This document shows, piece after piece, positions 20,736 through 40,550 of a DNA stretch of 64,000 nucleotides. Below the pieces are notes generated by a model, which saw only the letters and a list, made by a program, of their open reading frames with translations, made no database searches and was not told the DNA's origin. The stretch covers positions 186,001 to 250,000 of the IMG/VR virus record IMGVR_UViG_3300032782_000001. The stretch is one strand, 5' to 3'. The first letter of the stretch is position 1. Each line of letters begins with the position of its first letter. The position numbers and the translations under genes are program-made.

Positions 20736-21656
20736 TCACTGGAATTTCGCCTTCCTACGGCGTTCTCTTTGTTTGATAGCACTCCTAATTTTCTGTTCTG
20801 AATAACAAACCCCGCAAATTATATACGGATGTCCGCGTTTCTGGACCTGATGGCATTCATTGATAGGAACTAGGCCATGCTTTCTACAAAACCTTTCTTG
20901 CAATAGCGCTCGTATGCGCCTCTTTTCTTCATTGATGGCTCGAATCTTAACTTTGGATTCAGTGGACTGTTTCCGTCCCGTATTGGATGATGCTATTCTT
21001 TCGATAATATGTTGATCACGAGAACCGACGATCGCGCTAATTTTGGCGCAGTGGGCTTCACTCAGTTTCCTACCAAGAAGCGAAGATGCTATTTTCTTCT
21101 TGGTTTCGTATTTATGATGTTTACCGGAAAAAGTCCCATCACACCGAGATTTAACTTCTGGCCTCATCCGCGTTTCTTTAGAAGAATCGGAACGTTTAGA
21201 ACGAGATTCAGAAGTTTGGAACGTGGACTTTCTTTTAAACCGGGCTTCAGCAGTCTGAGATAGTTGGTGAATATTTTTTAAATTTTCGAGAGCCTTCTCT
21301 CGGTATTCTATTCGATCCCACGGATTCTTGATCGGATGCGGAACATGAGATCCGCCTTTAACGAGATTGAAACCCTTAGCGGGGTTTCTCGTGTCGTAAA
21401 ATTCAATTCGGTCCTCTTCTAAAAGATTAGCCTCTTCTAGAGTATTGCAAAATCCTAGAACTTCATGCGAGAAGGCTTCCTTGCCATACGCACGGATGGC
21501 ATTCGCGAAGTGGGAAACGCCCTTCCCGACCTTCGTTCGGTTCGCCGTGTAGACGTGCTGATTCCAGCGCTGAAGAAGCGTCTTCTTCGTCAAACCGACG
21601 TAACGGCGGCCAGTGGCAGCATGAATGTGGCAATAGACTGTCCAGCGGGATTCCAT
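20736..21656 (-). mobile_element. Free-standing GIY-YIG homing endonuclease with NUMOD3-like repeats (copy 1)
   Basis: TVY...GRRYVGLT, RWNQH, AIRAYG...F, E...I..YDT...KGFNL..GG; repeats GKHHKYETKKKI, GRKLSEAHCAKIS, GRKQSTESKVKI; C-terminal CxxH...CxxC. Confidence 0.88.
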
Positions 21657-22484: not shown

Positions 22485-22775
22485 TTACGATACGTAATCT
22501 TCTTCTACTGTGGCGCCTGAAATGGCTGTACTACCGGATTTTGTTCCCGTATAATAGACTCCAGTAGGATCTGGAAGGTCAGTAACAACCCAAACTCTGT
22601 AAATAATTGATGGTAATGCGTCTACGTCTAGCCAACGCATTTTGATCCTTCGAACGGGCCCTTGAGTGGATGGCTCTTGGAATGTGGCTGGAAAGGCATA
22701 TGAAGTAACAACAGGGGCGTAATAACTAGCCTGAGCCACAGTGTACGTCCACCCTTGAGTAGTAAAATCAGCCAT
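22485..22775 (-). CDS. Small virion protein, possible adaptor of the paralog array
   Basis: 96 aa, with gaps of only 1-3 nt to both neighbours. Confidence 0.55.
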   Translation of the reverse strand: MADFTTQGWTYTVAQASYYAPVVTSYAFPATFQEPSTQGPVRRIKMRWLDVDALPSIIYRVWVVTDLPDPTGVYYTGTKSGSTAISGATVEEDYVS

Positions 22776-22776
22776 A

Positions 22777-23715
22777 CTAAACCGCTACGGGAGTTCCGTC
22801 CCATGGTAGATTGACGTCACTAATGACTATCCTGTCGCCTGTACTGAGATAGCTCAATAGCTGTCCAGACTGTTTCCGCATCCCGTGCCACATCATAACA
22901 TACCCCACGCCCTTGATCCCGATAGGTTCTGAGGTAGTTGTATTATGACCGTAGATAACGGGGCCAACCTCTTCGTCCATAGAATGAGGATTTATTCCAA
23001 GTAGATTAGGAAACATGAAATTTCCTGCACTAGGATTACCAACCCCTAATGGATTGCAAGCAGACCAAGCTTCTGCTGGAGTCCCTTTTCCAAACCAGGC
23101 ACCACCGCCTGAAGCACTTGATACGTTTCCAATTGAAAAACCGTTTGTACCTGGGACTGTCCAAACAAAGGGATCTGGGTCATTTGGAGACCCCGTATTG
23201 GCCATGATTGCATCCAATACAATTCCTCCTCCTGGAGCGCTGCCGGGGTTCCCGTCTGATATAATAGCGAGGAAAAATCCATAAGGAGCTGCGTTATCAG
23301 CTCCCATATTTACATGATAACTATTATCGCTCAAGAATCCTGTGAATGTTCCACGAATATTCTGAGAATCTGTAGCCGTAGGGATGACAGTAGCACTAGG
23401 ACTGCCGCCTGTATACCCAGCAGAATAACTATATGTGAGTGTGCTAACATTGGAAATTCCTGACATCTGTAAAAGCATTTCTCGAGTAACCCCGAGATAA
23501 GAAGGCATCTGGATGCGAAACCAAGCGTTGGCGTTACCAAGGCCTCCAGCTCCAGAAGATGCCGTTGTCAAAATATCACTGGAACTCGAGAACAGACTAA
23601 GTCCGTCCCCTGAAGATTTAACAGTCCATCCAGCGGTTTTGAGAAGCTCCTTCAAATTGAAAAGAGCTCCCGCTCCCGTTACAAGACCAATATTCTTCCG
23701 GAATATGAACGACAT
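22777..23715 (-). CDS. Tandem paralog 4 of 4, putative receptor-binding/virion protein
   Basis: Start at ATG 23715 (MSFIFRKN) by alignment with paralogs; LK..L..AGW.VKSSGDG, AWFRIQMP, GGSP..TATD, AAPYGF, D.DP.V, KG...M.W.G, D.NLPWDG. Confidence 0.75.
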   Translation of the reverse strand: MSFIFRKNIGLVTGAGALFNLKELLKTAGWTVKSSGDGLSLFSSSSDILTTASSGAGGLGNANAWFRIQMPSYLGVTREMLLQMSGISNVSTLTYSYSAGYTGGSPSATVIPTATDSQNIRGTFTGFLSDNSYHVNMGADNAAPYGFFLAIISDGNPGSAPGGGIVLDAIMANTGSPNDPDPFVWTVPGTNGFSIGNVSSASGGGAWFGKGTPAEAWSACNPLGVGNPSAGNFMFPNLLGINPHSMDEEVGPVIYGHNTTTSEPIGIKGVGYVMMWHGMRKQSGQLLSYLSTGDRIVISDVNLPWDGTPVAV

Positions 23716-23720
23716 ATTGC

Positions 23721-24668
23721 CTAGAGAAGGGGGTAACTGCCGTTCCACGGCAAGTTTATATCACCAAAACAAATCCTGTCTCGAGCAGTATTGATTCCGA
23801 TAGCTGTTCCTGTAGCAAACCTGGAACTGTTGAACTTGAAAATTGAACTCATTCCTTTCCATCCGTTAGGGGCGGCTTGGCTTCCTGAAGTGGTTCGACC
23901 CCAGAACAGCGGATAAGAAAATTTCTTATTGAAATAAGTCAACAAAACTTCTGCTTGTGCAGGAATTAATGGAGTGCTAGAAGCCCCATATTGCATGGCT
24001 TGAATTTGTTGGAATGTGGCTCCAGTTTGCCCGTAGTTGTACCAGGCTCTCTGAGTGTTACTTTGAGTAGTTAATGAAGTAAATGGAGTACCCGACGTAC
24101 TGGCAATGAGAACCACAGGATCCGCATCGCTGACAGGATATGTGCCCGTCACCATCGGGTCCATGACGAGAACTCCGTCTAAAGTGGTTCCATCAATCGA
24201 ATTAGGTCTAAATCCGACACTCCAAAAACCATAAGGAGCAGCTGCATCAGCAGCTGCATTCCATCTATATGTTGCATCAGTGCTATTCATCCAAGATACG
24301 AATGTACCTGAAGTACCGATCAAAAATTGTTCATCGGTAGCGGTCGGCATTACAGTAGCACTTGGACTACCGCCAGTAAACTTTGCCTGCGCCGAGTATT
24401 TTACTCTCCATTGCCCAATGGATCCGTTTGTCTGCATGCAGAATTCCCGAGTACCTCCCGGGTCTTGAATTCGGAACCATGAATTGGCATTTGCCATACC
24501 ACCAGAGCCAGTTGTAGCACTAGTAATTTGGTCTCCTGATGAGTTAAAAGTAGTTCCATCCCCAGACGACTTCACGATCCAACCTACGAGCTTTAGCAGT
24601 GCTTTGAACCTGAATACAAGTTGCCAGCTCGTGGTCACCGCGGTGTTAGAATCATAGGAGAAAGCCAT
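23721..24668 (-). CDS. Tandem paralog 3 of 4
   Basis: Same conserved blocks (GWIVKSSGDG, SWFRIQDP, TGGSPSAT, ADAAAPYGFW, GWKG, DINLPWNGS). Confidence 0.75.
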   Translation of the reverse strand: MAFSYDSNTAVTTSWQLVFRFKALLKLVGWIVKSSGDGTTFNSSGDQITSATTGSGGMANANSWFRIQDPGGTREFCMQTNGSIGQWRVKYSAQAKFTGGSPSATVMPTATDEQFLIGTSGTFVSWMNSTDATYRWNAAADAAAPYGFWSVGFRPNSIDGTTLDGVLVMDPMVTGTYPVSDADPVVLIASTSGTPFTSLTTQSNTQRAWYNYGQTGATFQQIQAMQYGASSTPLIPAQAEVLLTYFNKKFSYPLFWGRTTSGSQAAPNGWKGMSSIFKFNSSRFATGTAIGINTARDRICFGDINLPWNGSYPLL

Positions 24669-24670
24669 GA

Positions 24671-25630
24671 CTAAATCGTTGGAGTGGACCCATTCCAGGG
24701 AAGATTAACGTCTCGATACACGATTCTATCCTTAGCACCAGGAGAAGAGATAGAAAGTGTGTCGCCTGTGGTCCTAGATGAGCCATTCCATTTCATGAAG
24801 GAACACATCCCTTTAAAACCTCCAGGCCAACGAGCTTCTCCAGAGATAACTTGTCCAGGAGAACCGACAGGAATATCAAAGACGTCATCGTTCCCGTTGT
24901 GAGGATTGGGCCCGACGTTATTAGGAATGGTGGAAGATCCATTGTAGAAAGAAAAACACCAAGTTGGGACCCCAGAGGTAAAAGCGGAATTAAAACGCTC
25001 TCCTGTAAGTCCTTTGCGGAAATAAGCAGCAAGACCGTTTCCGCCACCCGCAAGATCGCTTCCAGCGGAAAAAGTGGAAGTGACAATCGAAATATAGAAA
25101 ACATACGGATCTGCATCAGACGGGTCAGTTTGATTCAACGGAAACATGCAAATGCACCCGTTCGGATTTCCTCCGCCGATAGCGAACTGACTAGCCCAAA
25201 ATCCATAGGGAGCAGCATCATCAGCAGCTGCATTCCATCGATACGTGCTATTGCCAGGGAAAATGCTGAACCCATTAGATAGGCTAATGCTGTCAGTTGC
25301 CGTAGCAGGCACGGAAGCAGAACCACCAGAGAAATGAGCAGAATATGAGTATTTGATAACCCAAGAAGTGTCGTTACTACGCTCAAACATGAGCTGCCGA
25401 TTGACCCCATTCATGGTCGGCATCTCAATCACGAACCAAGCAGTTCCGTTCCCGAGCCCACCCGCTCCAGTGTTACCAGAAGTTATGACGTCACCGGAAG
25501 AACTGAAAGCACTGAGACTGTCCCCGGATGATCTGACAACCCATCCGGCGGCTACCAACAGAGTCTTCAGCTTGAAGACAGCCTGAGGCCCCGTAATGGC
25601 TGCGTTGTTGACGTCATAATGGAATGCCAT
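24671..25630 (-). CDS. Tandem paralog 2 of 4
   Basis: Same conserved blocks (AGWVVRSSGD, AWFVIEMP, ADDAAPYGFW, DADP, GFKG, DVNLPWNGS). Confidence 0.75.
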   Translation of the reverse strand: MAFHYDVNNAAITGPQAVFKLKTLLVAAGWVVRSSGDSLSAFSSSGDVITSGNTGAGGLGNGTAWFVIEMPTMNGVNRQLMFERSNDTSWVIKYSYSAHFSGGSASVPATATDSISLSNGFSIFPGNSTYRWNAAADDAAPYGFWASQFAIGGGNPNGCICMFPLNQTDPSDADPYVFYISIVTSTFSAGSDLAGGGNGLAAYFRKGLTGERFNSAFTSGVPTWCFSFYNGSSTIPNNVGPNPHNGNDDVFDIPVGSPGQVISGEARWPGGFKGMCSFMKWNGSSRTTGDTLSISSPGAKDRIVYRDVNLPWNGSTPTI

Positions 25631-25636
25631 AATTCC

Positions 25637-26566
25637 TCAGGTCAGGATTTTGCTGCCATTCCAAGGCAAAGCAATGTCACCAACCGTCACAGTATCTCGT
25701 GTCGTAGAAACTGAAAGAAGAGTGGGAGTAACATAAGCCTGTCCAACCATTTTCATTAGACTGGAAACTCCTTTCCAACCGACAGGGGCCGTTTTTCCAG
25801 TATCTCTTGCGTAGAACACGGGAAACATCACTTCATTGAATGAATGAGAATGATTACCGGCTCCTCCCGGGAACAGAATCGGTGATGACCCTAGAGCCAC
25901 TCTCATCCAGGGAATGTTAACAAATCCTTCCCCCGCCAATCCCTTCTTCAAATACCCAAGTGGTGAACCAGGAGTGCCGACGGAAAAAGCACTGCTGCCG
26001 ACAAAAATAAACACCATCGGATCGTTATCGGCCGCAGGATAAGATCCTGCGAGCAGAGGGTCCATGACAAGAGAACAAGTTATGGACGAATTGAACTGAC
26101 CGCCAAAGGTGTAGGCAAACATGTAAAAACCATATGGAGCAGCATTGTCACACGCGATCTGGATTCGATAAGTATTATCAGTAGTGAAAAGAGTAGTGGC
26201 ATTTAACAGAGTTTGACTATCAGTTGCAGTCCCAGGTGTCGTGGAATTTGGTGAACCGCCGGTAAATCCTGCTGAAAATGAATACTTAGAAGTCCAAACA
26301 GGATTGGAAGAACCTCTTTGAAATATGAGTTCACGAGAACCTGCACCGGCAGGTGATTGCATTCGAACCCAAGCACTTGTATTTGCGAATCCATTGGCGC
26401 CTGAATTCCCGGAGGTAATAATATCACCTGAACTAGAGAAAGCACTCAACCCGTCTCCGGATGACTGCGTAGTCCATCCTGCAGCTATGAGCGCTTGCTT
26501 GAAGCGGTACATAGCTTGAGACCCCGTCAGGGGTAGAGGATAGTTGATGTCAAATACGAGTGCCAT
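25637..26566 (-). CDS. Tandem paralog 1 of 4
   Basis: Same conserved blocks (AGWTTQSSGDG, AWVRMQSP, TGGSP, CDNAAPYGF, DNDP, GWKG, DIALPWNGS). Start overlaps the upstream stop by 1 nt. Confidence 0.75.
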   Translation of the reverse strand: MALVFDINYPLPLTGSQAMYRFKQALIAAGWTTQSSGDGLSAFSSSGDIITSGNSGANGFANTSAWVRMQSPAGAGSRELIFQRGSSNPVWTSKYSFSAGFTGGSPNSTTPGTATDSQTLLNATTLFTTDNTYRIQIACDNAAPYGFYMFAYTFGGQFNSSITCSLVMDPLLAGSYPAADNDPMVFIFVGSSAFSVGTPGSPLGYLKKGLAGEGFVNIPWMRVALGSSPILFPGGAGNHSHSFNEVMFPVFYARDTGKTAPVGWKGVSSLMKMVGQAYVTPTLLSVSTTRDTVTVGDIALPWNGSKILT

Positions 26567-27891
26567 TAGCTGTAAAGAACCTCAAGCTGCGCGAGCTTGC
26601 ACGTGCAACCATCTCCAGCGCCCGCAGGATTGGGGGTGAAGACTTGAAGTTGGACCTCGTAAGTTCTCAAAGCGTTTTTAATATTCCCAGCAGCACCGCC
26701 TACGGTGAGAGTCCCGGAAATAAGACGAGAAGGTGTCGTGGATGCCACAGACAACGCCGTCCCGGTAACATCTTCTGCGTCGTCTACGTTAAATAATTTC
26801 ACCTGGGCAGTAACGCCAGGGGTTCCTTCCAACACCGCTCGGAACTTGATTGTCCTCGTGAATCCTGAAGATCCAGCTCCAGCGGCAATTACGGAAGGAT
26901 CGAAAACAATGCAACCAATACCTTTATAAGTATTGGAGCCTGTGCCGGAATTAGACTGAGACCCTGTGACACCTGGGAAAGTGAAAATTGCAGGGACAGT
27001 AGCCAGGGAAGAAGGAGTCCATTGTGCTCCGTCCCAAAGAACCACATTGCCGGTTGATGGAGCCGCAGAATTAAAATTCCTACCTTGAATTTTTACAACG
27101 GTGTTAGACCCTATAGTCCCGGTTACATCTCCAGAAAGAGTCAAATTCAAAGTAGTGGGGGCCCATTTGGAACCATCCCATTCCAAAACTTGACTGGAGG
27201 TAGGAGCTGTCGAATCGACCGCCCTACCTTGAAGCTTGATAACAGTTGCACTAGCAATAGTCCCGGAAAGGTCTCCTCCTACTGCAGGATTGGTTGGAGT
27301 CCAAGCCGAACCATTCCACTCCAGGATATCTCCTGAAGACGGAGAACTTGCGCTTATTGGGTGGGATTGTAATCCCACTACCACTGCATCGTTGAGAGGC
27401 CCGGAAAGATCCCCACCAGCGCCTGCCGAAGTATTTAAGACGACATCCCAAATGTCTTCAATAACGTAAAGCCACGCATCCAGTTCTGTCATGGCTCCAC
27501 GGGAGCCCGTTTCAGATCCTTCAGTATAAGCAGGATGACGGCGGGGAAGCGTAGCAGTAGCTGCAATGACCGGATCGCCGGGGTTCCTGGCGTAGAACCA
27601 TAGTTCTGAAATTTTGTTGAGACCTACTCCACCATCAGCAATAAACCGGACTTTATACGTACCCTTGAAAGTAGGAGTGATGGTAACAGCAGGAAGCGTC
27701 AAAGGTGGAACTAAATTATCCCCAGATTCTATTAAACTGTGATCGACAGGACGACTAATTAACTGCCATTCATAAATACCGAAAGCAGACGTCAGAGAAA
27801 AGGTCACGGGGGTCCCCGTAACCACATCGTAGTTCGGGACTCCGGTGGTGACCGACAGACCCTGAGTTATGACGATGACCGGGCCTGGCAT
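26566..27891 (-). CDS. Fibre protein with three GGDL/W repeats and a C-terminal domain shared with the collagen-like protein
   Basis: Three (A/V/L)(G/S)GD(L/V)(S/T)G...V..(L/I)Q...P..G..L.W.G..W.P repeats; C-terminal FPGV.G.Q...GIG.I..DP...AV(L/I)E.TP...YEVQL...TCKLAQ. Confidence 0.7.
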   Translation of the reverse strand: MPGPVIVITQGLSVTTGVPNYDVVTGTPVTFSLTSAFGIYEWQLISRPVDHSLIESGDNLVPPLTLPAVTITPTFKGTYKVRFIADGGVGLNKISELWFYARNPGDPVIAATATLPRRHPAYTEGSETGSRGAMTELDAWLYVIEDIWDVVLNTSAGAGGDLSGPLNDAVVVGLQSHPISASSPSSGDILEWNGSAWTPTNPAVGGDLSGTIASATVIKLQGRAVDSTAPTSSQVLEWDGSKWAPTTLNLTLSGDVTGTIGSNTVVKIQGRNFNSAAPSTGNVVLWDGAQWTPSSLATVPAIFTFPGVTGSQSNSGTGSNTYKGIGCIVFDPSVIAAGAGSSGFTRTIKFRAVLEGTPGVTAQVKLFNVDDAEDVTGTALSVASTTPSRLISGTLTVGGAAGNIKNALRTYEVQLQVFTPNPAGAGDGCTCKLAQLEVLYS

Positions 27892-27924: not shown

Positions 27925-30900
27925 TCAGTTGAGAATAATAAGTTGTAGAGAATTGCGTTTGAGATCCCGCACCAATCGATAAGTGTGGAAGTTTCCATCT
28001 TCCCAGTCAAAAGGACGACGGAACAAAGTTTTGCCTGAATTTAGATCTTGAACTTTGACGAAACGAAATGAACCAAGCTTTTCAAAGCCGATACCAGCTG
28101 TAAAGCCGAAAGGTCCGGCAATTCCGGAAAAACCAACATAGATTCCTGAGTCCAAATTAGTGGATGGAGAGAATACGGAATTGATTCGAATGGAAAGAGT
28201 CATTTCAAACTTGACGGAAATAGAATCAGGGAGCCCCGAGCGGCTCTCATATGCCGTTCTCGTAGTTCCAATAGTTCCGTAACGCATGAAGTCTATTGGA
28301 CCTGCACTCATCATGGTGACGGACACAGAAGAGGGATCGTCTGACAAAATGAACCAGGGCGTGTATTGAGGAACGTCTAGTCCCAACAAGAAAATGGCTG
28401 AACCACTAAGAATCATTACTTTGGACGAGGGACCAGACGTCGGGCTAATAAGCCTAATGCGTCCATCGATCTCAGATGAGGCAAGAGATGAAGGGAGTCC
28501 CGGCGCAGAGTTGATTCGTGAAACAACAGCCCCCGAAGTCGTATCACCCGCTTGGAAAGTCACGAGAACAGGATCCGCTTGATCTACCTGAATCGTGATG
28601 GTTTCTCCTCCTACGATATTGAACGGCGGGGTCAGATTCCCAACAAGCTGAGCATTCTCAGGAAGAGCCGCACCAGTGAAAGTAAGCGTCTGATCTTGTT
28701 GCGCTTTAAATCCATCAATATGCCACGTTTCATCATCCGAGAACGGTGAAACGTGACCAGGTTCCCCCGTCGGAGTCCGGAAGAATTTCATTCCTTCATA
28801 CAAAACACGTGATGGCGGATCTAGTCTAATGAACACGGTTCCGCCGTGAACACCAGGCTGGACTCTATGAAGTTCATACTTTGTCCTAATCTCATTAAGT
28901 AAATCCACCGCCGTAATCAAATCCACAGCATCGGGGGATGTGACTACATTCACAGTGTCATCTGTTACGTGCACGTCATCTGCCGTCCGATGAATGTTAA
29001 ATTTGAGTTTAAGCTGATTGGTGGTAAGAATAAGACTGGCAAGATCAGAAGGTGGGGGCAAGAACACATGATCTTGAATGTCTTCCGTCACGTGGGTTCG
29101 AGGTCGAACCAAATGCATGTTGAATTGATTCAACAGATCAGCAGCAAGGGTCAAAGCAGTAACGGTCGGTCCATCGATAGAGCTGACTGACAGCACGGGG
29201 GAGAAGCCAAAATGATAAAGGTTTCCAACTCTATGAAGGTTATACTCTGACTTGAGCTCATTGAGAAGTGTAATCGCGGTATTCAAGTCAAATGCATCTG
29301 GAGATACAACAGCATATCTAATGTCAAGATCTTCATGCAGTTCCACTTGGGACTCGATGAGTGTCCTGTGCCGATTGAATTTCAGCTTCATATCATTGAT
29401 CAATCCAATAATGGATGGCAAATCCAAAACTGGTTGACCTGCGACAATTCGAGTGAAGGAACTTGGAGAAGAATCCGGAGTCGCATAAGGAGCAGATGCA
29501 GTAAAGAATCCGGCACCTACAGCAATAACGACCCTGAACGATCCAGCATTTGGACCCGTGAGAAATTCGATAGAGTTCCCGATTCCCAAAGGAATGGTCG
29601 GATTTTCGACAGTAACCAGATCAGCTTGGACCGATCCATACCCCAGACCCGGAATCCGTAGAATCGTTTCAGCATCGAGAATGTCAGAGAAGAAATGGAA
29701 TGATGTGGCCAATACGTGGGCACTCATTTGAACTCGAACTTCGTCAGCGAGAATCGCCAGACTAGTAATATCGGAAGCGTCAGCTGCCGTCACGATATTT
29801 GTGACATCAGGCGTGATGTGGAGCGGGCCGCCGTTCCTATGACCTGTGTACTGAACAATCAAGTCATCTGCCAGTACGACAGCTGAATCAATATCAGTCG
29901 CATCGGCGGATGTAACTATGTCTTGGTTGTCATCGAAATCATGAATACCAGGTTGAGTCCTGTGGGCGTTAAATTTAGCTTTCAGTTCATTGAGTAGTGC
30001 GATGGCCGACGACAGATCTAAAGCTGCTGGAAGAATCGAAGCGTTTACGAGATCATTGGATACATGCAAACCTGGCTGCACGCGATGTGAATTATACTTA
30101 GATTGAACATCATTTGCAATAGAAATAACATCAGAAATAGCATCGGAAACTGTTGTAGCTGATGGTTCAGTAACAACGTCATCAATATCATCTTCAAGGT
30201 CAGAAATGAATCCTTTAGTATTAACAAGATCTACGGACGGAATATTTTCTACGGGAGTAACGACACGAGTTAGCCCTCCCCTAGACTCAAGATTTTGAGT
30301 CTTCGGGACTGGCGGAGTGCCTTCGCCGAGAATAGTAAAAGCAGCAACATCCGCATCGCTCATGAAATCGTCCAGAGGAGTGCCACCAGAATAAATCCGG
30401 AAGCCAAAATGTTGATGAGTCTTGGCAGTAAAAAGATGATCGGGAGACGCTACAGCATTTGCCCGATTAGTAACTTGACCGGGAGAAATAAGTCGATCGC
30501 TCAAAGTGAGTTTGCCGATGGAATACTTAATGAAATCCCATCGAGTCCGGACGATCTCTTGCGGATTGAAACTACCGAAGGCTACGGCTTGATGGCCGCT
30601 TGTGATTCCTTTCAAAAAACTTGTGGAGGATGATGGAAGTCGCAAAGAGTCGTAATTTGTGCTGATTACAGGAACTTGTCCCCCATCCACATAAACGGAA
30701 ACGGCAGACACGGGGTCACGAACAATTCGATAAGTGTGGAGCGCTGTCCAATCAACTTGATATAAATAGTATGAGTCGAGAATCGTAGGATCTCCACCCA
30801 TGAAAATTCCCACGAATCTACGACTAGAAGCGCTGGGATCAGAAATCTTACTATCACGGAAAACTGTCACAGTATTCCAATCCACCACAGACATGGCAGA

Positions 30901-33900
30901 ACGCATGTCACTTCCGTTTACTGGAGCACTTCCGGATCCAAACGACAAAGAAGGACCTGCCAATCCAGTATTTAATCCAGAATAAGTCGGTGACGGTTGT
31001 CCCGATAACGGACTAAGAAGAGATCCGTCTGCGAGGACAAAAATGGAATCGGCGTTCTTGGACGTGTAGACATCATAAGAGTGAGTTTGCCCGTCTCCCC
31101 AGTTGAAAGCGTACTGAGCTTTCACGTCCAAAGAACCGGTAGACGTATTGAAAGACACAAGATTTAGGTATTTATTGTTGGTTATCGGATCAATAGCAGT
31201 CTGCAGTTCTAAAGACTTACCGGAAGGGCCTTCATCAACGGATACTAAAGCACCACAGAAATGATATGTATTGTACGGGGGCGCCGCCGGGATACTATCA
31301 CCAGGCACGAATGAAAGAACTGCGAATCTGCAGTCCATCTTCCAATCCACAGATGAATTGAATGCTTGATTTGTAACTACAGGATCAGCAAGATTAAATA
31401 CAACATAATCAGAAACGTCTGAATCGGTCAGACGCATAGTCCGACCAAGCATTTCAGAAGACTGGGTACCGGCTCTAGTCCAAACTGGGCTATCGAGGTC
31501 AGGAAGATTCTCGCCGAACCAACTTACTCTTGGTTCCGGATTCGAGTCCTTGCCTCGATAAACTCCAGGACTGAATCCAAGTTTGGACAGCGAACTCCCG
31601 GAAATGATCTGAATACTGGATTGAATACCAACATCTGAGCTAGTGAGGGTGACTCGGCCTCCTGCTGCAGAAGCTAAAGTGAAACCAGCTGCAGTATTGA
31701 TAGTCGAAGCCACATTCACGGCAGTGGAATCAGATGGTGAGAAATTCACAGTAAAGGGAGGAGCTCCATCCAGACTAATGACGATGGAGTCACCTGAAAC
31801 CATCGGAAACGGTTCGGTAGACGATCCTGTGATAGTAGCCGGAGATGGCGAAAATTGAAGGAAACAGAATTGAACTGAAAAATTTTCGTCGTCGAGGAAA
31901 ACCCCCGCAGCTCGATTATCCAGGCTATGGGTCCAAAAATCAATCGAAGCAGCGAATTCGAAACTACAGGCAGTGTTTACAGAAAGAATAGGTTCAAGTC
32001 GTAGACATCCTCTATACGCACCAGAGCTCAAGCCTAGAGCTTGAACACTAGCAGAAGGAGCTGACGCCGTGGAATCAATCGTCAAAATTCCTGAAGCTAC
32101 TCGTTCCACGCCTCCTTGGCCAACAGTGATCCAAGGAGCTTGAGGATCCAATTCCGGAAGAGTATCAGCTTCGTAATCTACTCTCTTATTATCCCCGATT
32201 AAGTTTGCATCCACAGGGCTCATGTTGGAACGAACGAAAGCCCAATTGCTAGTTGATGTTGAATTTCTACCAATTGACCCGAAGAAAATTTGTTGTAGTG
32301 GGTCGAATTGTCCATCCAAATCGCTAATGGATGGGAGTTCCGTAACCGACGCTGTAGTAATAGGTGAAAGCCCACCGCTCAAGAAGAGTGAAATATCTCC
32401 GTCAGAATCACGGAAAATACGGTAAGTGGTAAGAACAGTCCAATCGACGCTAGCAGCATTCCAACTTTCTTGGAATTCCGCGAATCCTCGATTAGTAAGA
32501 ATCCCGGCTTGGCGAACTTGGTTGACAACGTTAGTTACGTCATTGACGAAGTGAATTCCAGGTTGTGTTTCATGTGCATTGAGTTTAGTCCTAATTTCAT
32601 TCACAAGAGTAAGAGACGTGGGCAGGTCATCCGCATCCGGAGACACAATGGGGTCAATCGTGTCTGGGATAATATGAACACCACTGGCTCCACCTTTTGC
32701 CATGTGGAGGTTCATTTTAGATTTCAGGTCATTCAATAAGATGACCAAAGATACTAGATCTGTCGCATCAACGATAACGACTGTATCATCAGGATCGTTG
32801 GGGATATGAGATCCTAGATTCGTAAGGTGTGAATTAAATTTAGCCTTCGCATCATTGACCATCACAATAGCTGACGATAGATTAATAGCGTCAGTCAGAA
32901 TGAATCCAATAACAGCCACTTTCTGGCCATCAGAAACTCCGAAAGAAACCCCTGTGAAAACTCCATCATTGACAGATTCTTCTACGAACATACGGAATGC
33001 TGCCGACAAAATAGCCGGTGCCCGCATGTCAATAGTATGAGTAAAGAACGGAGGTTGACTCGACGGTCCAGTCTGAATATTGGAATCGACGATGGTCAGT
33101 TGATTCCCTCCGGGAGCGAGAATAAACGTACCGTCACCTTCAAGAGTCCAAGGGTTATGGGCATTTTGAGGGAGTGTGATCGGGTCGTATCGAATGGTAG
33201 TTTCGAAGAAAGTTTGGAATAGGACAGGATATGCAAGACGATTGGTAGGAACGTTCAAAAGAAGGGTGCTGGGATCATTCAGAACAGCGGAATACCTCCT
33301 TTCAAGGCCTTTATACTTCCAGCCAACTTTTTGCGGCTGATAGGGGGACGTGAAATCAGGACTGGTGACTGGGTCAATAAGAAAAGACCGAGATCGATAC
33401 CTGTGTTCTGGGAATCCAGCATACCCGCGATTCCCAGCCTGATTCAGATTGAATTCTGGAGAATTTAGTCTGAGTAACTTGGCCGGCGGATTATTCAAAA
33501 ATGCATAGTTGATCGAGACTATATCTGTGGGGCTCGGTTTATTTGTAAGAACAACTGCCCCGAGAAGTCCGAATACTGCATCAACCGCAGCAGGAGACCC
33601 ATTCACAATTACGTCTACGTCCGCAGAATCATCTGCAACCATTCCAGGCCGAGGATCTTTGAGAATCCAAGAAAAAGGTCCAGTAAGGGGGCCCGGATAT
33701 AGACCCGTAATTGGTTTTACTTCTGAAATCGTGACCCGATTAACGGAATCCCCGACTTGATGAGATTTAAGGTTTTGCCTATGAGATTCAAATTTCCTAC
33801 GTAAATCATTGACAAGAATAACCGCACTAGCCAATGACGTTGCCGCAGGCGATAGAATCACATCATCCGTATCCGCAACTTTGTGAACAGGCGGAACACC

Positions 33901-34413
33901 TGATACGTCCACTACGTGTAAATTAAATTGGGTACGAATATCATTTAACATGATGATAGCCGATGCCAGATCAACAGCAATCGGGCTAGTTACTATGTTC
34001 ACGGTATCATCGGTCCCGTGGACTCCGATGATAGTAGTCCCCTGAGTAATTTTCTGAATCCTGTGAGAGTTATACCGAGCTTTGAGCTCGTTGGTTAAAC
34101 CCACGACAAGATTAGTAGTGATCCCAACATCAGAAATATCAAAACTAGCGTTTTCAAGTTGAAGAAGTTGATTATTGATGGCCTTCTTAATGTAGAAGAC
34201 CCCGTCGTTGCGGCCTCCGGCACTTCCCGTGATTGCAATTTGCTGACCCACATTGAGGGAATTGAAACTGCCAGTCGGAATTGAAACCTGCGTTTCCGAC
34301 ATAATTCGGAGGTTACTTCCGGCCAATAAATCAGCTGGCCTCTTGACAATAGGGCCTCGATTGGTAAAGAGAGTCCTATCGAGAACAGAGCTGAGACCAG
34401 TAAAGGTGATCAT
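27925..34413 (-). CDS. Giant virion protein with 15 helix-His-loop-His repeats, lectin-like (ConA/LamG-type) domains and adaptor domains
   Basis: Repeats such as LNELKAKFNAHRTQPGIHDFDD; four (D/N)W...(H/T)(T/S)Y lectin-like segments; two adaptor-domain copies. Confidence 0.7.
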   Translation of the reverse strand: MITFTGLSSVLDRTLFTNRGPIVKRPADLLAGSNLRIMSETQVSIPTGSFNSLNVGQQIAITGSAGGRNDGVFYIKKAINNQLLQLENASFDISDVGITTNLVVGLTNELKARYNSHRIQKITQGTTIIGVHGTDDTVNIVTSPIAVDLASAIIMLNDIRTQFNLHVVDVSGVPPVHKVADTDDVILSPAATSLASAVILVNDLRRKFESHRQNLKSHQVGDSVNRVTISEVKPITGLYPGPLTGPFSWILKDPRPGMVADDSADVDVIVNGSPAAVDAVFGLLGAVVLTNKPSPTDIVSINYAFLNNPPAKLLRLNSPEFNLNQAGNRGYAGFPEHRYRSRSFLIDPVTSPDFTSPYQPQKVGWKYKGLERRYSAVLNDPSTLLLNVPTNRLAYPVLFQTFFETTIRYDPITLPQNAHNPWTLEGDGTFILAPGGNQLTIVDSNIQTGPSSQPPFFTHTIDMRAPAILSAAFRMFVEESVNDGVFTGVSFGVSDGQKVAVIGFILTDAINLSSAIVMVNDAKAKFNSHLTNLGSHIPNDPDDTVVIVDATDLVSLVILLNDLKSKMNLHMAKGGASGVHIIPDTIDPIVSPDADDLPTSLTLVNEIRTKLNAHETQPGIHFVNDVTNVVNQVRQAGILTNRGFAEFQESWNAASVDWTVLTTYRIFRDSDGDISLFLSGGLSPITTASVTELPSISDLDGQFDPLQQIFFGSIGRNSTSTSNWAFVRSNMSPVDANLIGDNKRVDYEADTLPELDPQAPWITVGQGGVERVASGILTIDSTASAPSASVQALGLSSGAYRGCLRLEPILSVNTACSFEFAASIDFWTHSLDNRAAGVFLDDENFSVQFCFLQFSPSPATITGSSTEPFPMVSGDSIVISLDGAPPFTVNFSPSDSTAVNVASTINTAAGFTLASAAGGRVTLTSSDVGIQSSIQIISGSSLSKLGFSPGVYRGKDSNPEPRVSWFGENLPDLDSPVWTRAGTQSSEMLGRTMRLTDSDVSDYVVFNLADPVVTNQAFNSSVDWKMDCRFAVLSFVPGDSIPAAPPYNTYHFCGALVSVDEGPSGKSLELQTAIDPITNNKYLNLVSFNTSTGSLDVKAQYAFNWGDGQTHSYDVYTSKNADSIFVLADGSLLSPLSGQPSPTYSGLNTGLAGPSLSFGSGSAPVNGSDMRSAMSVVDWNTVTVFRDSKISDPSASSRRFVGIFMGGDPTILDSYYLYQVDWTALHTYRIVRDPVSAVSVYVDGGQVPVISTNYDSLRLPSSSTSFLKGITSGHQAVAFGSFNPQEIVRTRWDFIKYSIGKLTLSDRLISPGQVTNRANAVASPDHLFTAKTHQHFGFRIYSGGTPLDDFMSDADVAAFTILGEGTPPVPKTQNLESRGGLTRVVTPVENIPSVDLVNTKGFISDLEDDIDDVVTEPSATTVSDAISDVISIANDVQSKYNSHRVQPGLHVSNDLVNASILPAALDLSSAIALLNELKAKFNAHRTQPGIHDFDDNQDIVTSADATDIDSAVVLADDLIVQYTGHRNGGPLHITPDVTNIVTAADASDITSLAILADEVRVQMSAHVLATSFHFFSDILDAETILRIPGLGYGSVQADLVTVENPTIPLGIGNSIEFLTGPNAGSFRVVIAVGAGFFTASAPYATPDSSPSSFTRIVAGQPVLDLPSIIGLINDMKLKFNRHRTLIESQVELHEDLDIRYAVVSPDAFDLNTAITLLNELKSEYNLHRVGNLYHFGFSPVLSVSSIDGPTVTALTLAADLLNQFNMHLVRPRTHVTEDIQDHVFLPPPSDLASLILTTNQLKLKFNIHRTADDVHVTDDTVNVVTSPDAVDLITAVDLLNEIRTKYELHRVQPGVHGGTVFIRLDPPSRVLYEGMKFFRTPTGEPGHVSPFSDDETWHIDGFKAQQDQTLTFTGAALPENAQLVGNLTPPFNIVGGETITIQVDQADPVLVTFQAGDTTSGAVVSRINSAPGLPSSLASSEIDGRIRLISPTSGPSSKVMILSGSAIFLLGLDVPQYTPWFILSDDPSSVSVTMMSAGPIDFMRYGTIGTTRTAYESRSGLPDSISVKFEMTLSIRINSVFSPSTNLDSGIYVGFSGIAGPFGFTAGIGFEKLGSFRFVKVQDLNSGKTLFRRPFDWEDGNFHTYRLVRDLKRNSLQLIILN

Positions 34414-37796: not shown

Positions 37797-40550
37797 TCAT
37801 GCCCAGGTAAATACGATTTGTGCCAGTTTGCAGGTAGCCTGATCCGAAGGCCCAGGACCAGTAGGACCAGAAGGTCCCGTCGGATAGCATCTAAGCTGAA
37901 CTTCGTAGAGTTGCATCTGGTTATCCAAGTCGGCCGGCACGGTCAGTATCTGTCGAACGAGTGTGGGAGTGGTATTGATCAAGTTCTTCGTAGTTCCCGA
38001 AATACCAGTACCGACGCCAAGGTTATAGAGACGAATCTCTGCATACATGCTTGGCGTGGACTCAATAACAGCTTGCCATTCGATTTGTCGACCACTGACT
38101 TGAGTTTTGGTTGGATCTACTGCGATGGCTCCAATACCAACGAAGCCAGTTTGACCAGTTTGTTGAGCTCCAACCACCCCCGGGAAAACAACAGAAATTG
38201 GGAATGGTCCAGATCCGCCCCCACCACCTCCACCAGGACCAGTTGCACCTTGAGGACCCGTCGCTCCGGTAGCTCCGGCGGGTCCGGTAGCTCCGGCGGG
38301 TCCGGTAGCTCCCGTTACGCCTGGAGATCCTTGCGAACCAATAGCTCCTTGCGGTCCAGTGGCTCCTGTAACTCCTGGAAGGCCGATCGGACCTGTGGAT
38401 CCCTGAGGTCCGGTAGGTCCCGCAGGTCCAATTGCACCTTGAGGACCAGTCGCCCCCGTCAACCCCGGAGATCCTTGAGGAGCTCCGGCGGGTCCGGTAG
38501 CTCCAGTGACCCCGTCCATGCCGGCAGGACCCGTAGCCCCCTGAGGACCCGTAGCCCCCGGAGCTCCAGTTACTCCGTCCGCACCTTGTGGTCCAGTGGC
38601 TCCAGTGACGCCGGGTGACCCTTGAGGAGCTCCCGCAGGTCCAGTTACTCCAGTGACCCCAGGTGAGCCCTGAACGCCCTGCGACCCAGTAGGGCCAACC
38701 GCACCCGTCGCCCCAGTTGCACCAGCATTTCCAATGGGTCCGGTTGCACCTTGTGGACCGGTTGCACCTTGTGGACCGGTTGGACCAGTTACTCCAGTTA
38801 AACCTGGAGACCCTTGCGGACCTGTTGCTCCTTGTGGCCCCGTAGATCCTTGTGGCCCCGTAGATCCTTGTGGTCCAGTCGCCCCAGTTGCTCCTTGGGG
38901 ACCAGTTGCTCCTTGGGGACCAAGGGGCCCTGTAACGCCATCAATTCCCGTTGCACCTTGAAGGCCCGTTGCACCTTGTGGACCGGTTACTCCCTGCGCT
39001 CCGGTTGTACCGACAGGTCCAGTTGGGCCAGTTGCTCCAGTGGCCCCTTGTGGACCGGTTGCACCTTGTGGACCGGTTGTACCAATAGGTCCAGTCGGGC
39101 CAGTTGCTCCAGTGACTCCGTCTACACCGGTGGCGCCTTGTGGACCAGTTACACCATCAGCTCCTGTTGAGCCCTGCGGCCCTGTGGGGCCAGTAGCCCC
39201 CGTTGCACCTGGGGGCCCACCAAAGGGACCCGTAGGCCCTTGAGGACCAGTGGAACCGGTAACACCTTGTGGGCCTGCAGGACCTGTCGGACCAGTAGTT
39301 CCCGTAAAACCTGGAGAACCTTGCGGCCCGATTGAACCAGTAGGTCCTTGGGGACCTGTGGGGCCAGTTGCACCTTGCGGGCCAGTTGGTCCAATTGGAC
39401 CACCAGAAGGTCCAGTCGGGCCAGTAGCACCAACGGCACCAACCAAACCAATCGCAGAAATTTCGCCTGTTAAGAAATTGACAGTTCCGGAGTTAGCAAG
39501 CCATTGAACCTTTACGGTATAAGTTCCAGCTGACAAGGCCGTGGACGTAAACGTCCCGGCCACAATGCTCATGGAAGTGGATTCTCCATCCTCTTGGAGA
39601 GATGGACCGTTTTGGGAGTCAATAACGAGTCGAAAAACGGCAGAACTTGAAAGAACATCAGGCTGCCACTGGAGAGAGAACGACGCCGAAATAGGCGCCG
39701 TACTTCCAATAGTGACGCTCGTAGACATACCCGGGATGTCTACGAATCCGACACTCGTAGTCTGAGCAAATGTCGGAGTGCTAATATATCCGAAGGGAAT
39801 TGGAGCGGGGGCTGGTGCCGGACCCTGAATACCCGTAGCGCCTTGTAAACCTGTAGCTCCTTGTGGTCCAGTGACTCCCGGAGAACCTTGAGGCCCAGTC
39901 GGCCCCGTGGCACCAGTCGCTCCAACTGGCCCAGCAGCACCTGTGACTCCAGCGGGTCCAGTGACTCCCGGAGAACCTTGAGGCCCAGTCGTTCCAGGAC
40001 TACCTTGGGGACCTGTGGTTCCTGCAATACCAGGAGAACCTTGAGTTCCTTGGGATCCCGTAGCTCCTCTCGGTCCCGTTGGTCCAGTCGCCCCCGTCGA
40101 TCCGACAGGTCCGGTGGCTCCAGTTGGTCCCTGAGGACCTCCAAAAGGCCCCGTGGGACCCTGGGCACCAGTAGGACCCACAGGGCCCGTGACACCAGTA
40201 GGACCCGCAGGTCCCGCAGGTCCTATGGGACCCGTAGAACCAGCAGGACCGGTAATTCCGGTGATGTCTGTTTTAAGTTGATCAATGGCCCCTGCAGTCA
40301 AAATATGAGTGACTGTCGCGCCGAAAGCGTGGGTCGCTGCGGAAGTTCCCTCTTGACCACGGAGAACTGTAAATAAATTCCCGGCGACTCCAGTGACGAT
40401 CAAAATCTCATCGTCAATCCGAATACGGAATTGCGGGAGAGGAGGAAACAACGCAGCGCTGGCGACAGTAACATTCGTCGCCACGGGGCTAATGCCGCCG
40501 AGCTGGTTGATAGTCGTCTGTGCGCCGTTGGAGAATTTCTCGGTGGTCAC
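37797..40550 (-). CDS. Collagen-like fibre protein (two Gly-X-Y blocks, internal BclA-CTD-like domain)
   Basis: About 50 and about 135 G-X-Y triplets rich in GPT/GAT/GPQ; N-terminal '[10 protein letters not shown]...[15 protein letters not shown]' domain; middle '[12 protein letters not shown]...FRLVID...[10 protein letters not shown]'; GTG start. Confidence 0.88.
38230..40265. repeat. Coding tandem repeats (9/18-bp periodicity) of the collagen region
   Basis: For example (GGTCCGGTAGCTCCGGCG)n near 38265-38312, (GGACCGGTTGCACCTTGT)n near 38737-38782, and a 36-bp duplicate GGTCCAGTGACTCCCGGAGAACCTTGAGGCCCAGTC near 39865 and 39955. Confidence 0.9.

What the first reader, a model, noticed from the sequence alone, without database searches (positions are those of the whole stretch)
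22485..26566. Four tandem diverged paralogs plus a small partner, directly behind a fibre gene
Seen: four ~310-320-aa genes with 2-6-nt gaps share blocks (K..L...GW...SSGD, W.(R/V).(Q/E).P, TATD, AAPYGF, D.DP.V, KG, LPW.G) separated by variable segments, especially in the C-terminal half. DNA identity is limited to short tracts (e.g. CATCAGCAGCTGCATTCCATC near 24245 and 25218), so these are old duplicates kept intact. Inference: either a hetero-oligomeric receptor-binding head or a panel of alternative adhesins mounted on the 441-aa or collagen fibres. The 'L..L...GW' N-terminus recalls receptor-binding subunits of pilus-dependent siphophages, a resemblance from memory that I cannot verify here.
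Basis: partly seen in the sequence, partly recalled or inferred. Interest (0 to 1): 0.7.

Follow-up and report, generated by a model that had tools for sequence, protein, structure and literature searches.

The report
Four-paralog bead-type fibre cassette
A complete 436-kb uncultivated phage carries four old, tandem copies of a roughly 315-residue protein whose predicted fold matches only the two paired subunits that build the pilus-binding tail fibres of Pseudomonas phage JBD30, so they most likely assemble with each other into a host-attachment fibre.

Summary
Four minus-strand genes (309, 319, 315 and 312 aa) are about 40% identical, lie 2-6 nt apart and are followed by a 96-aa gene.

They belong to a large unannotated family (2,363 clusters at 50% identity). 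It has no Pfam or PHROG match and no detectable relative in cultured phages.

An AlphaFold model of paralog A (pLDDT 94) matches one solved structure only: JBD30 gp47 (Z 17.7; next best 5.4). JBD30 gp47 and gp48 are adjacent, similarly folded proteins whose stacked heterodimers form the pilus-binding fibres.

Phylogeny shows four orthologous classes in a fixed gene order in at least six other contigs, so the duplication is old and each copy is kept. The A+B pair passes a controlled complex prediction (ipSAE 0.82, best control 0.00).

The array is the middle of a recurring cassette: a fibre protein ending in a shared 125-aa domain, then one to four family genes, then a small protein. A second, one-copy cassette lies elsewhere in the same genome. 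In small myophage contigs the single family gene sits between spike and wedge genes.

Best reading: a hetero-oligomeric fibre or arm of the adsorption apparatus. This is a new variant of the JBD30-type fibre. Receptor, stoichiometry and virion position are untested.

The parts
26566..27891 (-). 441-aa fibre-like protein ('C'). It has an N-terminal part, three repeat units (residues about 158-300) and a roughly 125-aa C-terminal beta-sandwich domain (CTD, residues about 311-441, nt 26569-26961).
   Evidence: Weak PHROG tail-fibre and DUF6087 repeat hits. The CTD is 43% identical to the 172-aa protein directly upstream of the array in L001 and recurs upstream of arrays in L005, L024, L027, L030, L037, L042, L054 and L055. 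ESM Atlas structural neighbours are CBM_4_9/ASD1-like sandwiches and prophage tail proteins, TM 0.6-0.78; this is a lead only.
25637..26566 (-). Paralog A (class 1), 309 aa
   Evidence: AlphaFold model pLDDT 94.2, pTM 0.92. JBD30 gp47 Z 17.7. Class A clade support 98/90.
24671..25630 (-). Paralog B (class 2), 319 aa
   Evidence: Class B clade 97/93. Predicted to pair with A: ipSAE 0.82 against best control 0.00.
23721..24668 (-). Paralog C (class 3), 315 aa
   Evidence: Class C clade 93/91.
22777..23715 (-). Paralog D (class 4), 312 aa from the ATG at 23715
   Evidence: (P0007, 312 aa). Class D clade 100/99.
22485..22775 (-). Small partner ('s'), 96 aa, with a disordered N-terminal 40 residues and a confident three-stranded C-terminal mini-domain
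   Evidence: 54% identical to the 101-aa gene that follows the array in L001. Homologues follow arrays in L005, L027, L031, L037, L042, L054 and L055, and in the second cassette of the same genome. The fold has no PDB match, best Z 3.4.
37797..40550 (-). 917-aa collagen-repeat fibre ending in the same CTD (residues about 795-916). It is an associated fibre, not adjacent to the array.
   Evidence: Pfam Collagen 5e-70. CTD match to the L001 172-aa protein at 1e-19, by jackhmmer and in the own-genome search at 1.9e-17.
41459..44911 (-). 1150-aa baseplate wedge protein (Baseplate_J / gp6-like). This is context that places the region in a myophage baseplate and fibre module.
   Evidence: Pfam Baseplate_J 1.7e-10 and phrog_6 2.4e-21.

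Best explanation
The four genes encode subunits of a non-trimeric, bead-type fibre or arm of the phage's adsorption apparatus. It is built like the JBD30 gp47/gp48 tail fibre.

Proposed mechanism: each roughly 315-aa subunit is a globular beta-rich protein. Two subunits pair through their C-terminal halves in a pseudo-two-fold dimer, and dimers then stack. Four distinct subunits (A-D) are made from one tightly coupled operon, so the assembly is a defined hetero-oligomer rather than a homopolymer.

The assembly works together with the trimeric fibre protein encoded just upstream, whose 125-aa C-terminal beta-sandwich domain is the conserved companion. It also works with the 96-aa protein encoded just downstream, which is probably an adaptor or cap.

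The complex contacts the host surface. The receptor may be a filament or a glycan. In relatives, surface loops of this scaffold carry inserted ligand-binding domains.

What is shown: paralogy, fold, age and conservation of the four classes, the cassette linkage, and baseplate synteny of single-copy relatives. What is predicted in silico: A:B pairing. What is inferred: stacking, attachment to the CTD, the role of the small protein, and receptor binding.
For: - Fold: the model of A (pLDDT 94.2) matches only JBD30 gp47. Z is 17.7 over 252 residues at rmsd 3.4, and the next entry scores 5.4. Two chains, all from entry 8rk3, reach Z >= 8. Foldseek also lists the 305-aa chain, gp48. gp47 and gp48 are adjacent genes with similar folds, and three stacked heterodimers form each pilus-binding fibre (PMC11445458).
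- Conservation: a careful tree gives four classes (A 98/90, B 97/93, C 93/91, D 100/99). Each corresponds to one array position in the window, L001 and the 325-kb ENA contig, whose gene order was seen directly. L054 and L055 also show four family genes in tandem. Orthologues are 47-62% identical, against about 40% between paralogs.
- Pairing: A+B scored ipSAE 0.82, 0.64 and 0.82 in three runs, and the best of three controls scored 0.00. Partner pLDDT was at least 87 and runs shared at least 71% of contacts. This mark was reached by 58 of 80 solved complexes and 2 of 110 mismatched pairs; these counts hold only roughly because my own alignments were used. Both chains contribute their C-terminal halves.
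- Cassette: the order CTD protein, then family genes, then small protein is seen in the window, L001, L005, L027, L037, L054 and L055. It is seen in part in L024, L030, L034 and L042. A second one-copy cassette lies in the same genome at G000:C1 about 91.9-94.1 kb.
- Tail context: single-copy members lie between a Gp138_N-type spike gene and gp25-like and Baseplate_J wedge genes, after the tape measure, Dit-like, plug and hub genes. The window holds Baseplate_J and a collagen fibre.
- Adhesin hints: a 630-650-aa Kelch propeller is inserted at profile position about 160 of the third paralog in L006, L007 and L040. That position is outside the predicted dimer interface. Relatives of gp47 carry PA14 or F5/8 type C inserts.
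- Virion presence of fold relatives: BFVD hits A7KUT2, A7KUT3 and A7KUT4 (293, 270, 267 aa) have the same lengths as 0305phi8-36 ORF158-160. These are three tandem paralogs found in virions by mass spectrometry, and a small ORF161 follows them.
Against: - No sequence-level link to gp47/gp48. Profile-profile probability is 1.2% or less for gp47, and 3.2% for gp48 as a single sequence. The relation rests on a predicted structure.
- The complex test cannot tell hetero- from homodimers. Close cousins of a true partner also pass, and only one pair could be run. A one-copy cassette exists, so homo-oligomers are viable for this family.
- The predicted interface (C-half to C-half) is not the contact the JBD30 paper describes, which is a helix of gp48 in a depression of gp47.
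- Predicted interface residues are no more class-specific than the rest of the C-terminal half. There is therefore no co-evolution signal for obligate pairing.
- In L054 the cassette lies two genes downstream of a major capsid gene. In L001 it lies next to sugar-modification genes, and in the 325-kb contig among non-structural genes. Context alone does not fix it to the tail.
- There are no proteomic or imaging data for this phage or any sequence relative. None is cultured.
Confidence: 0.55

Rival explanations
1. Structural socket or adaptor of the baseplate periphery. In this reading the family forms a non-adhesive platform that anchors trimeric fibres to the baseplate through their shared C-terminal domain. 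The paralogs would provide distinct docking positions.
For: - Single-copy members sit inside the baseplate core gene order, between spike and wedge genes.
- The N-terminal half is strongly conserved. That suits a conserved protein partner better than a variable receptor.
- Three CTD-bearing fibres occur in one genome.
- In JBD30 the gp47/gp48 arms attach to the Dit and upper baseplate proteins.
Against: - Phage fibres usually anchor by their N-termini. ESM Atlas neighbours of the CTD are carbohydrate-binding-module-like sandwiches, typical of distal knobs.
- Kelch, PA14 and discoidin inserts point to ligand binding by the scaffold itself.
- The JBD30 arms bind the pilus.
Confidence: 0.2
2. Panel of alternative adhesins. 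Each paralog would be a separate homo-oligomeric receptor-binding protein, and the four would widen host range, alternatively mounted on the CTD-bearing fibres.
For: - The C-terminal halves are variable.
- Copy number ranges from 1 to 4 across lineages, with independent duplications in L004, L005, L027/L037, L028 and L039.
- A one-copy cassette works on its own.
- The complex test cannot exclude homodimers.
Against: - All four classes and their order are retained across contigs whose orthologues have diverged to 47-62% identity. There is no class turnover in the contigs seen.
- The genes are 1-6 nt apart, which suggests coupled, equimolar synthesis.
- Much of the variable region lies in the predicted subunit interface.
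- The solved precedent is a heteromer.
Confidence: 0.15
3. The proteins are not part of the tail. They would be a capsid decoration or head fibre, or a non-virion factor such as a fibre chaperone or an enzyme.
For: - The cassette lies two genes downstream of a Phage_capsid_4 gene in L054.
- It lies next to glycosyltransferase and methyltransferase genes in L001.
- The JBD30 authors speculated that gp47 is nitrilase-like.
- Many acidic residues are conserved.
Against: - No enzyme fold matches. All non-JBD30 matches have Z of 5.4 or less.
- Pfam finds nothing in gp47 or gp48, even at E = 1.
- No Cys is conserved, as a nitrilase triad would need.
- The fold's solved and proteomic relatives are virion tail proteins.
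- Single-copy members show baseplate synteny.
Confidence: 0.07

Closest known systems
Pseudomonas phage JBD30 gp47/gp48 tail-fibre-forming proteins (PDB 8RK3; PMC11445458)
   Same: - The fold is shared (Z 17.7, 252 of 309 residues).
- The size is about 310 aa.
- The genes are adjacent and encode proteins of similar fold.
- Subunit pairing is predicted here and solved there.
- The scaffold tolerates inserted binding domains in relatives.
- Single-copy relatives lie in the tail-tip or baseplate gene module.
   Different: - No detectable sequence or profile similarity.
- Four conserved classes instead of two.
- A huge-phage and myophage context instead of a 37-kb siphophage.
- Linked to a CTD-bearing trimeric fibre gene and a small partner gene, which are absent next to gp47/gp48.
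- The receptor is unknown.
- The predicted interface differs from the one the paper describes.
Bacillus phage 0305phi8-36 gp158-gp160 (+gp161)
   Same: - Three tandem paralogs (25% identical) followed by a small ORF.
- They lie downstream of the gpJ-like baseplate gene.
- The fold is similar by BFVD (TM 0.46-0.60, probability 0.99-1.0).
- They were detected in virions by mass spectrometry.
   Different: - No sequence similarity.
- Matching UniProt A7KUT2-4 to ORF158-160 is inferred from consecutive accessions and identical lengths; it was not looked up.
- Their position in the virion is unknown.
Two-protein fibres predicted in Mesyanzhinovviridae (Pseudomonas phage Lydia gp67/gp68; PMC11946847)
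   Same: Two adjacent proteins of similar fold, proposed to form JBD30-type fibres in pilus-dependent siphophages.
   Different: Those are predictions for siphophages with two paralogs. They were not compared directly here.
Chimalliviridae DUF7941 paralogs (Goslar gp22/gp23, PhiKZ gp126/gp127; bioRxiv 10.64898/2026.04.21.720040)
   Same: This is a likeness in concept. Paralogous two-lobed proteins of about 290 aa from giant phages polymerise or heterodimerise and sit at the peripheral baseplate.
   Different: No Pfam match of any kind was found for the window's proteins, and no solved-structure match beyond JBD30. There is no evidence of a shared fold.
Tip adhesins and chaperones encoded downstream of fibre genes (T2-type gp38, Tfa-type chaperones). 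This comparison comes from general knowledge, not from a tool.
   Same: The gene order is the same: a fibre gene followed by accessory genes that complete or cap the fibre.
   Different: The fold and size are unrelated, and those systems have no paralog arrays.

Membership tests
JBD30 gp47/gp48-type fibre-forming proteins | Shared three-dimensional fold over most of the chain | tested here: met
   VIA-align Z 17.7, 252 residues aligned, rmsd 3.4; the next entry scores Z 5.4. Foldseek probability 0.98. The test rests on a predicted model with pLDDT 94.
JBD30 gp47/gp48-type fibre-forming proteins | Detectable sequence or profile homology | tested here: not met
   hhalign of the family profile against gp47 gave probability 0.1%, against gp48 3.2%, and against a 56-sequence gp47 profile 1.2%.
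JBD30 gp47/gp48-type fibre-forming proteins | Adjacent genes for similarly folded subunits that bind each other | tested here: inconclusive
   Adjacency and paralogy are shown. The A+B prediction passes with ipSAE 0.82 against control 0.00. This is in silico only, covers one pair, and was not compared with homodimers.
JBD30 gp47/gp48-type fibre-forming proteins | Encoded in the tail-tip or baseplate module and present in the virion | tested here: inconclusive
   Baseplate synteny holds for single-copy relatives, and Baseplate_J and fibre genes lie in the window. The cassette is found in other contexts elsewhere. There are no proteomics for this family.
JBD30 gp47/gp48-type fibre-forming proteins | Binds type IV pili | not testable with these tools
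   The host and receptor are unknown, and no cultured relative exists.
Nitrilase-superfamily hydrolase (suggested for gp47 in PMC11445458) | Match to a nitrilase-type family and a conserved Glu-Lys-Cys triad | tested here: not met
   No Pfam hit for the four paralogs or for gp47/gp48 at E up to 1. No conserved Cys among the invariant or near-invariant columns. No enzyme among the structural matches.
Classical trimeric tail fibre or tailspike receptor-binding proteins | Fibrous or beta-helical trimeric architecture | tested here: not met
   The model is a compact globular beta-rich protein with one helix. There are no fibre or tailspike matches.

The most novel reading that the evidence does not exclude
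Huge phages build branched, composite fibres of a kind not yet seen. In this reading a trimeric shaft (collagen or repeat type) ends in a carbohydrate-binding-module-like knob. On that knob sits a defined A-B-C-D hetero-tetramer, or a multiple of it, made of gp47-like beads and closed by a small cap protein. The number of paralogs (1 to 4) would set the length or valency of the bead segment. The same scaffold would have been recruited independently by siphophages (JBD30), small myophages (one copy in the baseplate core) and jumbo phages, making it a widespread but unrecognised building block of adsorption devices.
Probability: 0.25. Interest if true: 0.65.

Novelty: new variant of a known kind. 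Interest (0 to 1): 0.52.

Why it matters
Fibres made of stacked globular heterodimers, rather than trimeric rods, are known from one solved phage, JBD30, and its predicted siphophage relatives.

This finding shows that the same fold underlies a very large, unnamed family found in uncultivated phages (2,363 clusters at 50% identity). The family is organised in a recognisable three-part cassette, with up to four conserved subunit classes.

It gives annotators a handle on a block of dark genes in huge-phage genomes. It also gives structural biologists a defined set of proteins to co-express: A-D, the small protein and the fibre C-terminal domain. It links three cultured or solved reference points (JBD30, Lydia and 0305phi8-36).

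If the hetero-oligomer is confirmed, it would be a clear case of subunit diversification by tandem duplication in a phage adsorption organelle.

Tried and rejected
- **Family libraries.** Pfam and PHROGs on the four paralogs, the small protein and most neighbours found nothing for the paralogs. The only hits were chance-level: BES1_N at 0.18 and an HTH phrog at 0.045.
- **Cultured phages.** tblastn of paralog A and of two single-copy relatives against 50,697 phage records found no match.
- **Prokaryote genomes.** Two pattern scans of GTDB representative genomes found no relative, so there is no host clue.
- **Sequence link to fold relatives.** Profile-profile comparison with gp47, gp48, a gp47-family profile and 0305phi8-36 gp158-160 was not significant in any case.
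- **Interface co-variation.** I tested whether predicted A:B interface residues are more class-specific than the rest of the C-terminal half. They are not: 2.60 against 2.61 distinct class-consensus residues, and the same ratio of within-class to overall conservation.
- **Specificity-determining positions.** Strict searches for such positions found none.
- **Burial of variable segments.** Only secondary structure and the predicted interface were used. 34 of 80 variable positions lie in strands or helix, against a background of 48%.
- **Small protein fold.** No solved-structure match; best Z 3.4.
- **Promoter and terminator scan.** 17 promoter-like sites were found against 21.9 expected from shuffles, and the 22 terminator-like sites (14.4 expected) gave no convincing signal inside the operon.
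- **Tandem repeats in the 441-aa gene.** The tandem-repeat finder reported none at DNA level.
- **Beta-propeller lectin, clathrin and WD40 rows in Foldseek.** All have TM of 0.18 or less and were treated as noise.
- **Order of the duplications.** The relations between the four classes are an unresolved polytomy. A two-gene-unit duplication (A-B giving C-D) can be neither supported nor rejected.
- **Homodimers and other pairs.** A:A, C:D, D with the small protein and A with the CTD could not be tested, because only one complex job is allowed.

Full report
**1. What is in the window**

All genes in the region lie on the minus strand. In the direction of transcription they are:
- a 2162-aa ORF (34413..27925);
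- a 441-aa ORF (27891..26566);
- paralog A (26566..25637, 309 aa);
- paralog B (25630..24671, 319 aa);
- paralog C (24668..23721, 315 aa);
- paralog D (23715..22777, 312 aa from its ATG);
- a 96-aa ORF (22775..22485);
- a 263-aa ORF and then a GIY-YIG homing endonuclease gene.

The spacers between the paralogs and the small gene are 6, 2, 5 and 1 nt. The 441-aa gene overlaps the start of A by one base.

**2. A large unnamed family**

None of the four proteins hits Pfam or PHROGs. A profile search of 5.8 billion proteins found more than 227 relatives. Every one with a descriptive name is called hypothetical, and several lie on the same long contigs.

An exhaustive profile search of 1.84 billion cluster representatives found 2,363 clusters at E <= 1e-3 and 1,169 at E <= 1e-30.

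No cultured phage record holds a detectable relative of the window's copy or of two distant members. Pattern scans of GTDB genomes found none.

The window belongs to a complete 436,316-bp virus record with direct terminal repeats. The window is G000:C1:186001-250000.

**3. Fold**

With a 116-sequence alignment, AlphaFold2 gives a confident model of A (mean pLDDT 94.2, pTM 0.92). It is a compact protein with one N-terminal helix and many strands.

A search of 48,161 representative solved chains that does not depend on Foldseek returns a single strong match. This is the 317-residue chain of the JBD30 baseplate (8RK3), at Z 17.7 with 252 residues aligned and rmsd 3.4. The next entry scores Z 5.4. 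A second look at Foldseek's own hits gives the same result, with two chains at Z >= 8.

From the JBD30 genome, the 317-residue chain is gp47 and the 305-residue chain is gp48. Their genes are adjacent, between the tape measure gene and the Dit gene.

The JBD30 paper states that gp47 and gp48 have similar folds. Three heterodimers, rotated 180 degrees relative to each other, form each of three bent-arm tail fibres, and these fibres bind the type IV pilus (PMC11445458).

Profile-profile comparisons with gp47, gp48 and a 56-member gp47 profile are not significant. Nothing enzymatic matches the model. Pfam finds nothing in gp47 or gp48 either, so the nitrilase suggestion in that paper gets no support here.

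**4. Other fold relatives**

In the viral structure library the best hits include three consecutive UniProt accessions of 293, 270 and 267 residues. Other hits are Bacillus phage G gp371, 'virion structural proteins' of Burkholderia KL1 and Xanthomonas FoX4, and proteins of Agrobacterium phage Atu_ph07.

The three lengths equal those of ORF158, ORF159 and ORF160 of Bacillus phage 0305phi8-36. These are tandem paralogs (25% identical), each annotated as detected in virions by mass spectrometry. They lie downstream of the gpJ-like baseplate gene and are followed by a 114-aa ORF.

The match between accessions and ORFs is my inference from lengths and order. There is no sequence similarity to the window's family.

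**5. The duplication is old and every copy is kept**

Gene maps were drawn for related contigs fetched by identity look-up and by pattern scans. They show four family genes plus a small gene in the 325-kb ENA contig (316, 321, 311, 314 and 96 aa), in L001/L002, in L054 and in L055.

A careful maximum-likelihood tree of 45 members resolves four classes: A 98/90, B 97/93, C 93/91 and D 100/99. In the window, L001 and the 325-kb contig, where the gene order was seen directly, each class corresponds to one position in the array. Orthologues are 47-62% identical, against about 40% between paralogs. The branching order of the classes is unresolved.

Other lineages duplicated independently:
- two copies in L027/L037, L028 and L039;
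- three copies in L004 and L005;
- three copies in L006, L007 and L040.

A distant clade in 28-47-kb myophage contigs has one copy.

**6. The array is the middle of a three-part cassette**

The last 125 or so residues of the 441-aa protein are 43% identical to the C-terminus of the 172-aa protein directly upstream of the array in L001. The collagen fibre of the window (917 aa, Pfam Collagen 5e-70) ends in the same domain.

An iterative search over all fetched loci finds this domain in the gene just upstream of the family genes in L001, L005, L024, L027, L030, L037 and L042, and one gene further upstream in L034. By size and position it is also upstream of the arrays in L054 and L055.

The same search finds homologues of the 96-aa protein just downstream in L001, L005, L027, L031, L037 and L042. 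By position and alignment it is also downstream in L054 and L055.

The window's own genome holds a second cassette about 118 kb away. It consists of:
- a 327-aa collagen protein with the C-terminal domain;
- a fifth, divergent family member (E 4e-11 in the genome search, 1.6e-15 for the ORF);
- an 86-aa homologue of the small protein.

Three components that travel together in independent loci, with a variable number of the middle component, most simply form one structure.

ESM Atlas structural neighbours of the C-terminal domain are carbohydrate-binding-module-like sandwiches and prophage tail proteins (TM 0.6-0.78; a lead only).

The small protein has a disordered N-terminal 40 residues and a confident three-stranded C-terminal domain with no solved counterpart.

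**7. Tail or head?**

In the single-copy contigs the gene order is:
- sheath;
- tape measure;
- Dit-like protein;
- Pam3 gp18-type plug;
- E217 gp41-type hub;
- Gp138_N-type spike;
- the family member;
- a 127-aa ORF;
- gp25-like wedge;
- Baseplate_J.

The window itself has a Baseplate_J/gp6-like 1150-aa gene and the collagen fibre upstream. Together with JBD30 and 0305phi8-36, this points to the tail.

Against a simple picture, the cassette behaves as a mobile module. In L001 it follows glycosyltransferase, methyltransferase and epimerase genes. In L054 it lies two genes downstream of a major capsid gene. In the 325-kb contig it sits among non-structural genes.

**8. Do the paralogs bind each other?**

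One controlled complex prediction was allowed. A+B scored ipSAE 0.82, 0.64 and 0.82 in three runs, and the best of three controls scored 0.00. Partner pLDDT was at least 87, and runs shared at least 71% of contacts.

That mark was reached by 58 of 80 solved complexes and by 2 of 110 mismatched pairs. These counts hold only roughly, because my own alignments were used.

Both chains contribute their C-terminal halves (A 176-275, B 169-283). This gives a pseudo-symmetric dimer, which recalls the 180-degree relation in JBD30 but is not the helix-in-depression contact that paper describes.

The test cannot separate hetero- from homodimers, and the one-copy cassette shows that homo-oligomers are possible in the family.

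The variable segments of the family fall at about residues 151-165, 186-205, 222-235 and 255-262. They overlap the predicted interface in part. Interface residues are no more class-specific than the rest of the C-terminal half, so there is no co-variation signal.

**9. Hints of ligand binding**

In L006, L007 and L040 the third paralog carries a 630-650-residue Kelch propeller insert at profile position about 160. This is a loop outside the predicted interface.

In the gp47 family some relatives carry a PA14 or F5/8 type C domain after the N-terminal helix. Both scaffolds are therefore used to display binding modules.

**10. Verdict**

The best explanation (confidence 0.55) is a hetero-oligomeric, bead-type fibre or arm of the adsorption apparatus. 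It would be built from four conserved gp47-like subunit classes and would work with the upstream CTD-bearing fibre and the downstream small protein.

The rivals are:
- a non-adhesive baseplate socket for fibres (0.2);
- a panel of alternative homo-oligomeric adhesins (0.15);
- a non-tail or non-virion role (0.07).

The system is a new variant of a known kind. The fold and the principle of paired paralogs are known from JBD30. New features are the sequence family, the four fixed classes, the link to a shared fibre C-terminal domain and a small partner, and the huge-phage and myophage setting.

Noticed in passing
Outside the window: G000:C1 about 91,941-94,138 (L064:7942-10139), preceded by L064:4989-7904: A second, one-copy cassette lies in the same genome. 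It has a 327-aa collagen protein ending in the shared C-terminal domain, a divergent fifth family member and an 86-aa homologue of the small partner. A 971-aa collagen-like protein lies just upstream.
   Followed up: partly
window 36912-37769 (-) and 20736-21656 (-): Two free-standing GIY-YIG homing endonuclease genes (285 and 306 aa, phrog_314) bracket the block that holds the 832-aa, 2162-aa and 441-aa genes, the four paralogs and the small gene. Related contigs also carry GIY-YIG, HNH or LAGLIDADG genes near the cassette. These may help move the module.
   Followed up: no
L006:11072-14302, L007:12056-15391, L040 third family gene (about 7000-9837): The third paralog of three-gene arrays carries a roughly 630-650-residue Kelch beta-propeller insert in the middle loop of the scaffold (profile position about 160).
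   Followed up: partly
P0304, P0310, P0335 (relatives of JBD30 gp47): Some gp47-family proteins of Pseudomonas and Nitrosomonas have a PA14 or F5/8 type C domain inserted after the N-terminal helix (residues about 45-200).
   Followed up: partly
L001:1132-9134 and 14095-15159; L054:11147-12223; L055:11158-12252: In the L001-type phages the cassette follows a run of glycosyltransferase, methyltransferase, cupin, epimerase and oxidoreductase genes. In L001, L054 and L055 alike a class-V aminotransferase gene comes directly after it. This might indicate glycosylation of a virion component.
   Followed up: no
window 27925-34413, 49210-54468, 10697-15355, 6091-10641 (all -): Giant ORFs of 2162, 1752, 1552 and 1516 aa have no or only marginal family matches (phrog_1101 tail protein 1.7e-7 for the 1552-aa ORF). 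They are presumably further tail or fibre components.
   Followed up: no
window 37797-40550; composition bins 38001-40000: The collagen-repeat fibre gene stands out by G+C content (0.59 against about 0.47 around it), as expected for Gly-X-Y repeats.
   Followed up: no
window 22485-22775 compared with alignment A5: Most homologues of the small partner have two conserved Cys residues (in the motifs D-x-D-C and T-K-C-G). The window's copy has Ala and Ser at these positions.
   Followed up: no
window 26566-27891 (residues about 158-300); L005:5668-8073: The 441-aa protein contains three roughly 48-residue repeats (weak DUF6087 and phrog_9627 hits). The same repeats occur many times in an 801-aa protein of L005 and once in the CTD protein of L005.
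   Followed up: no
L014:9893-10834 and neighbours (also L009, L013, L016, L017, L019): Small myophage contigs with a Pam3/E217-like baseplate gene order carry one family member plus a 127-aa ORF between the spike and gp25-like genes. This component has no counterpart among solved simple myophage baseplates in the structure search.
   Followed up: partly
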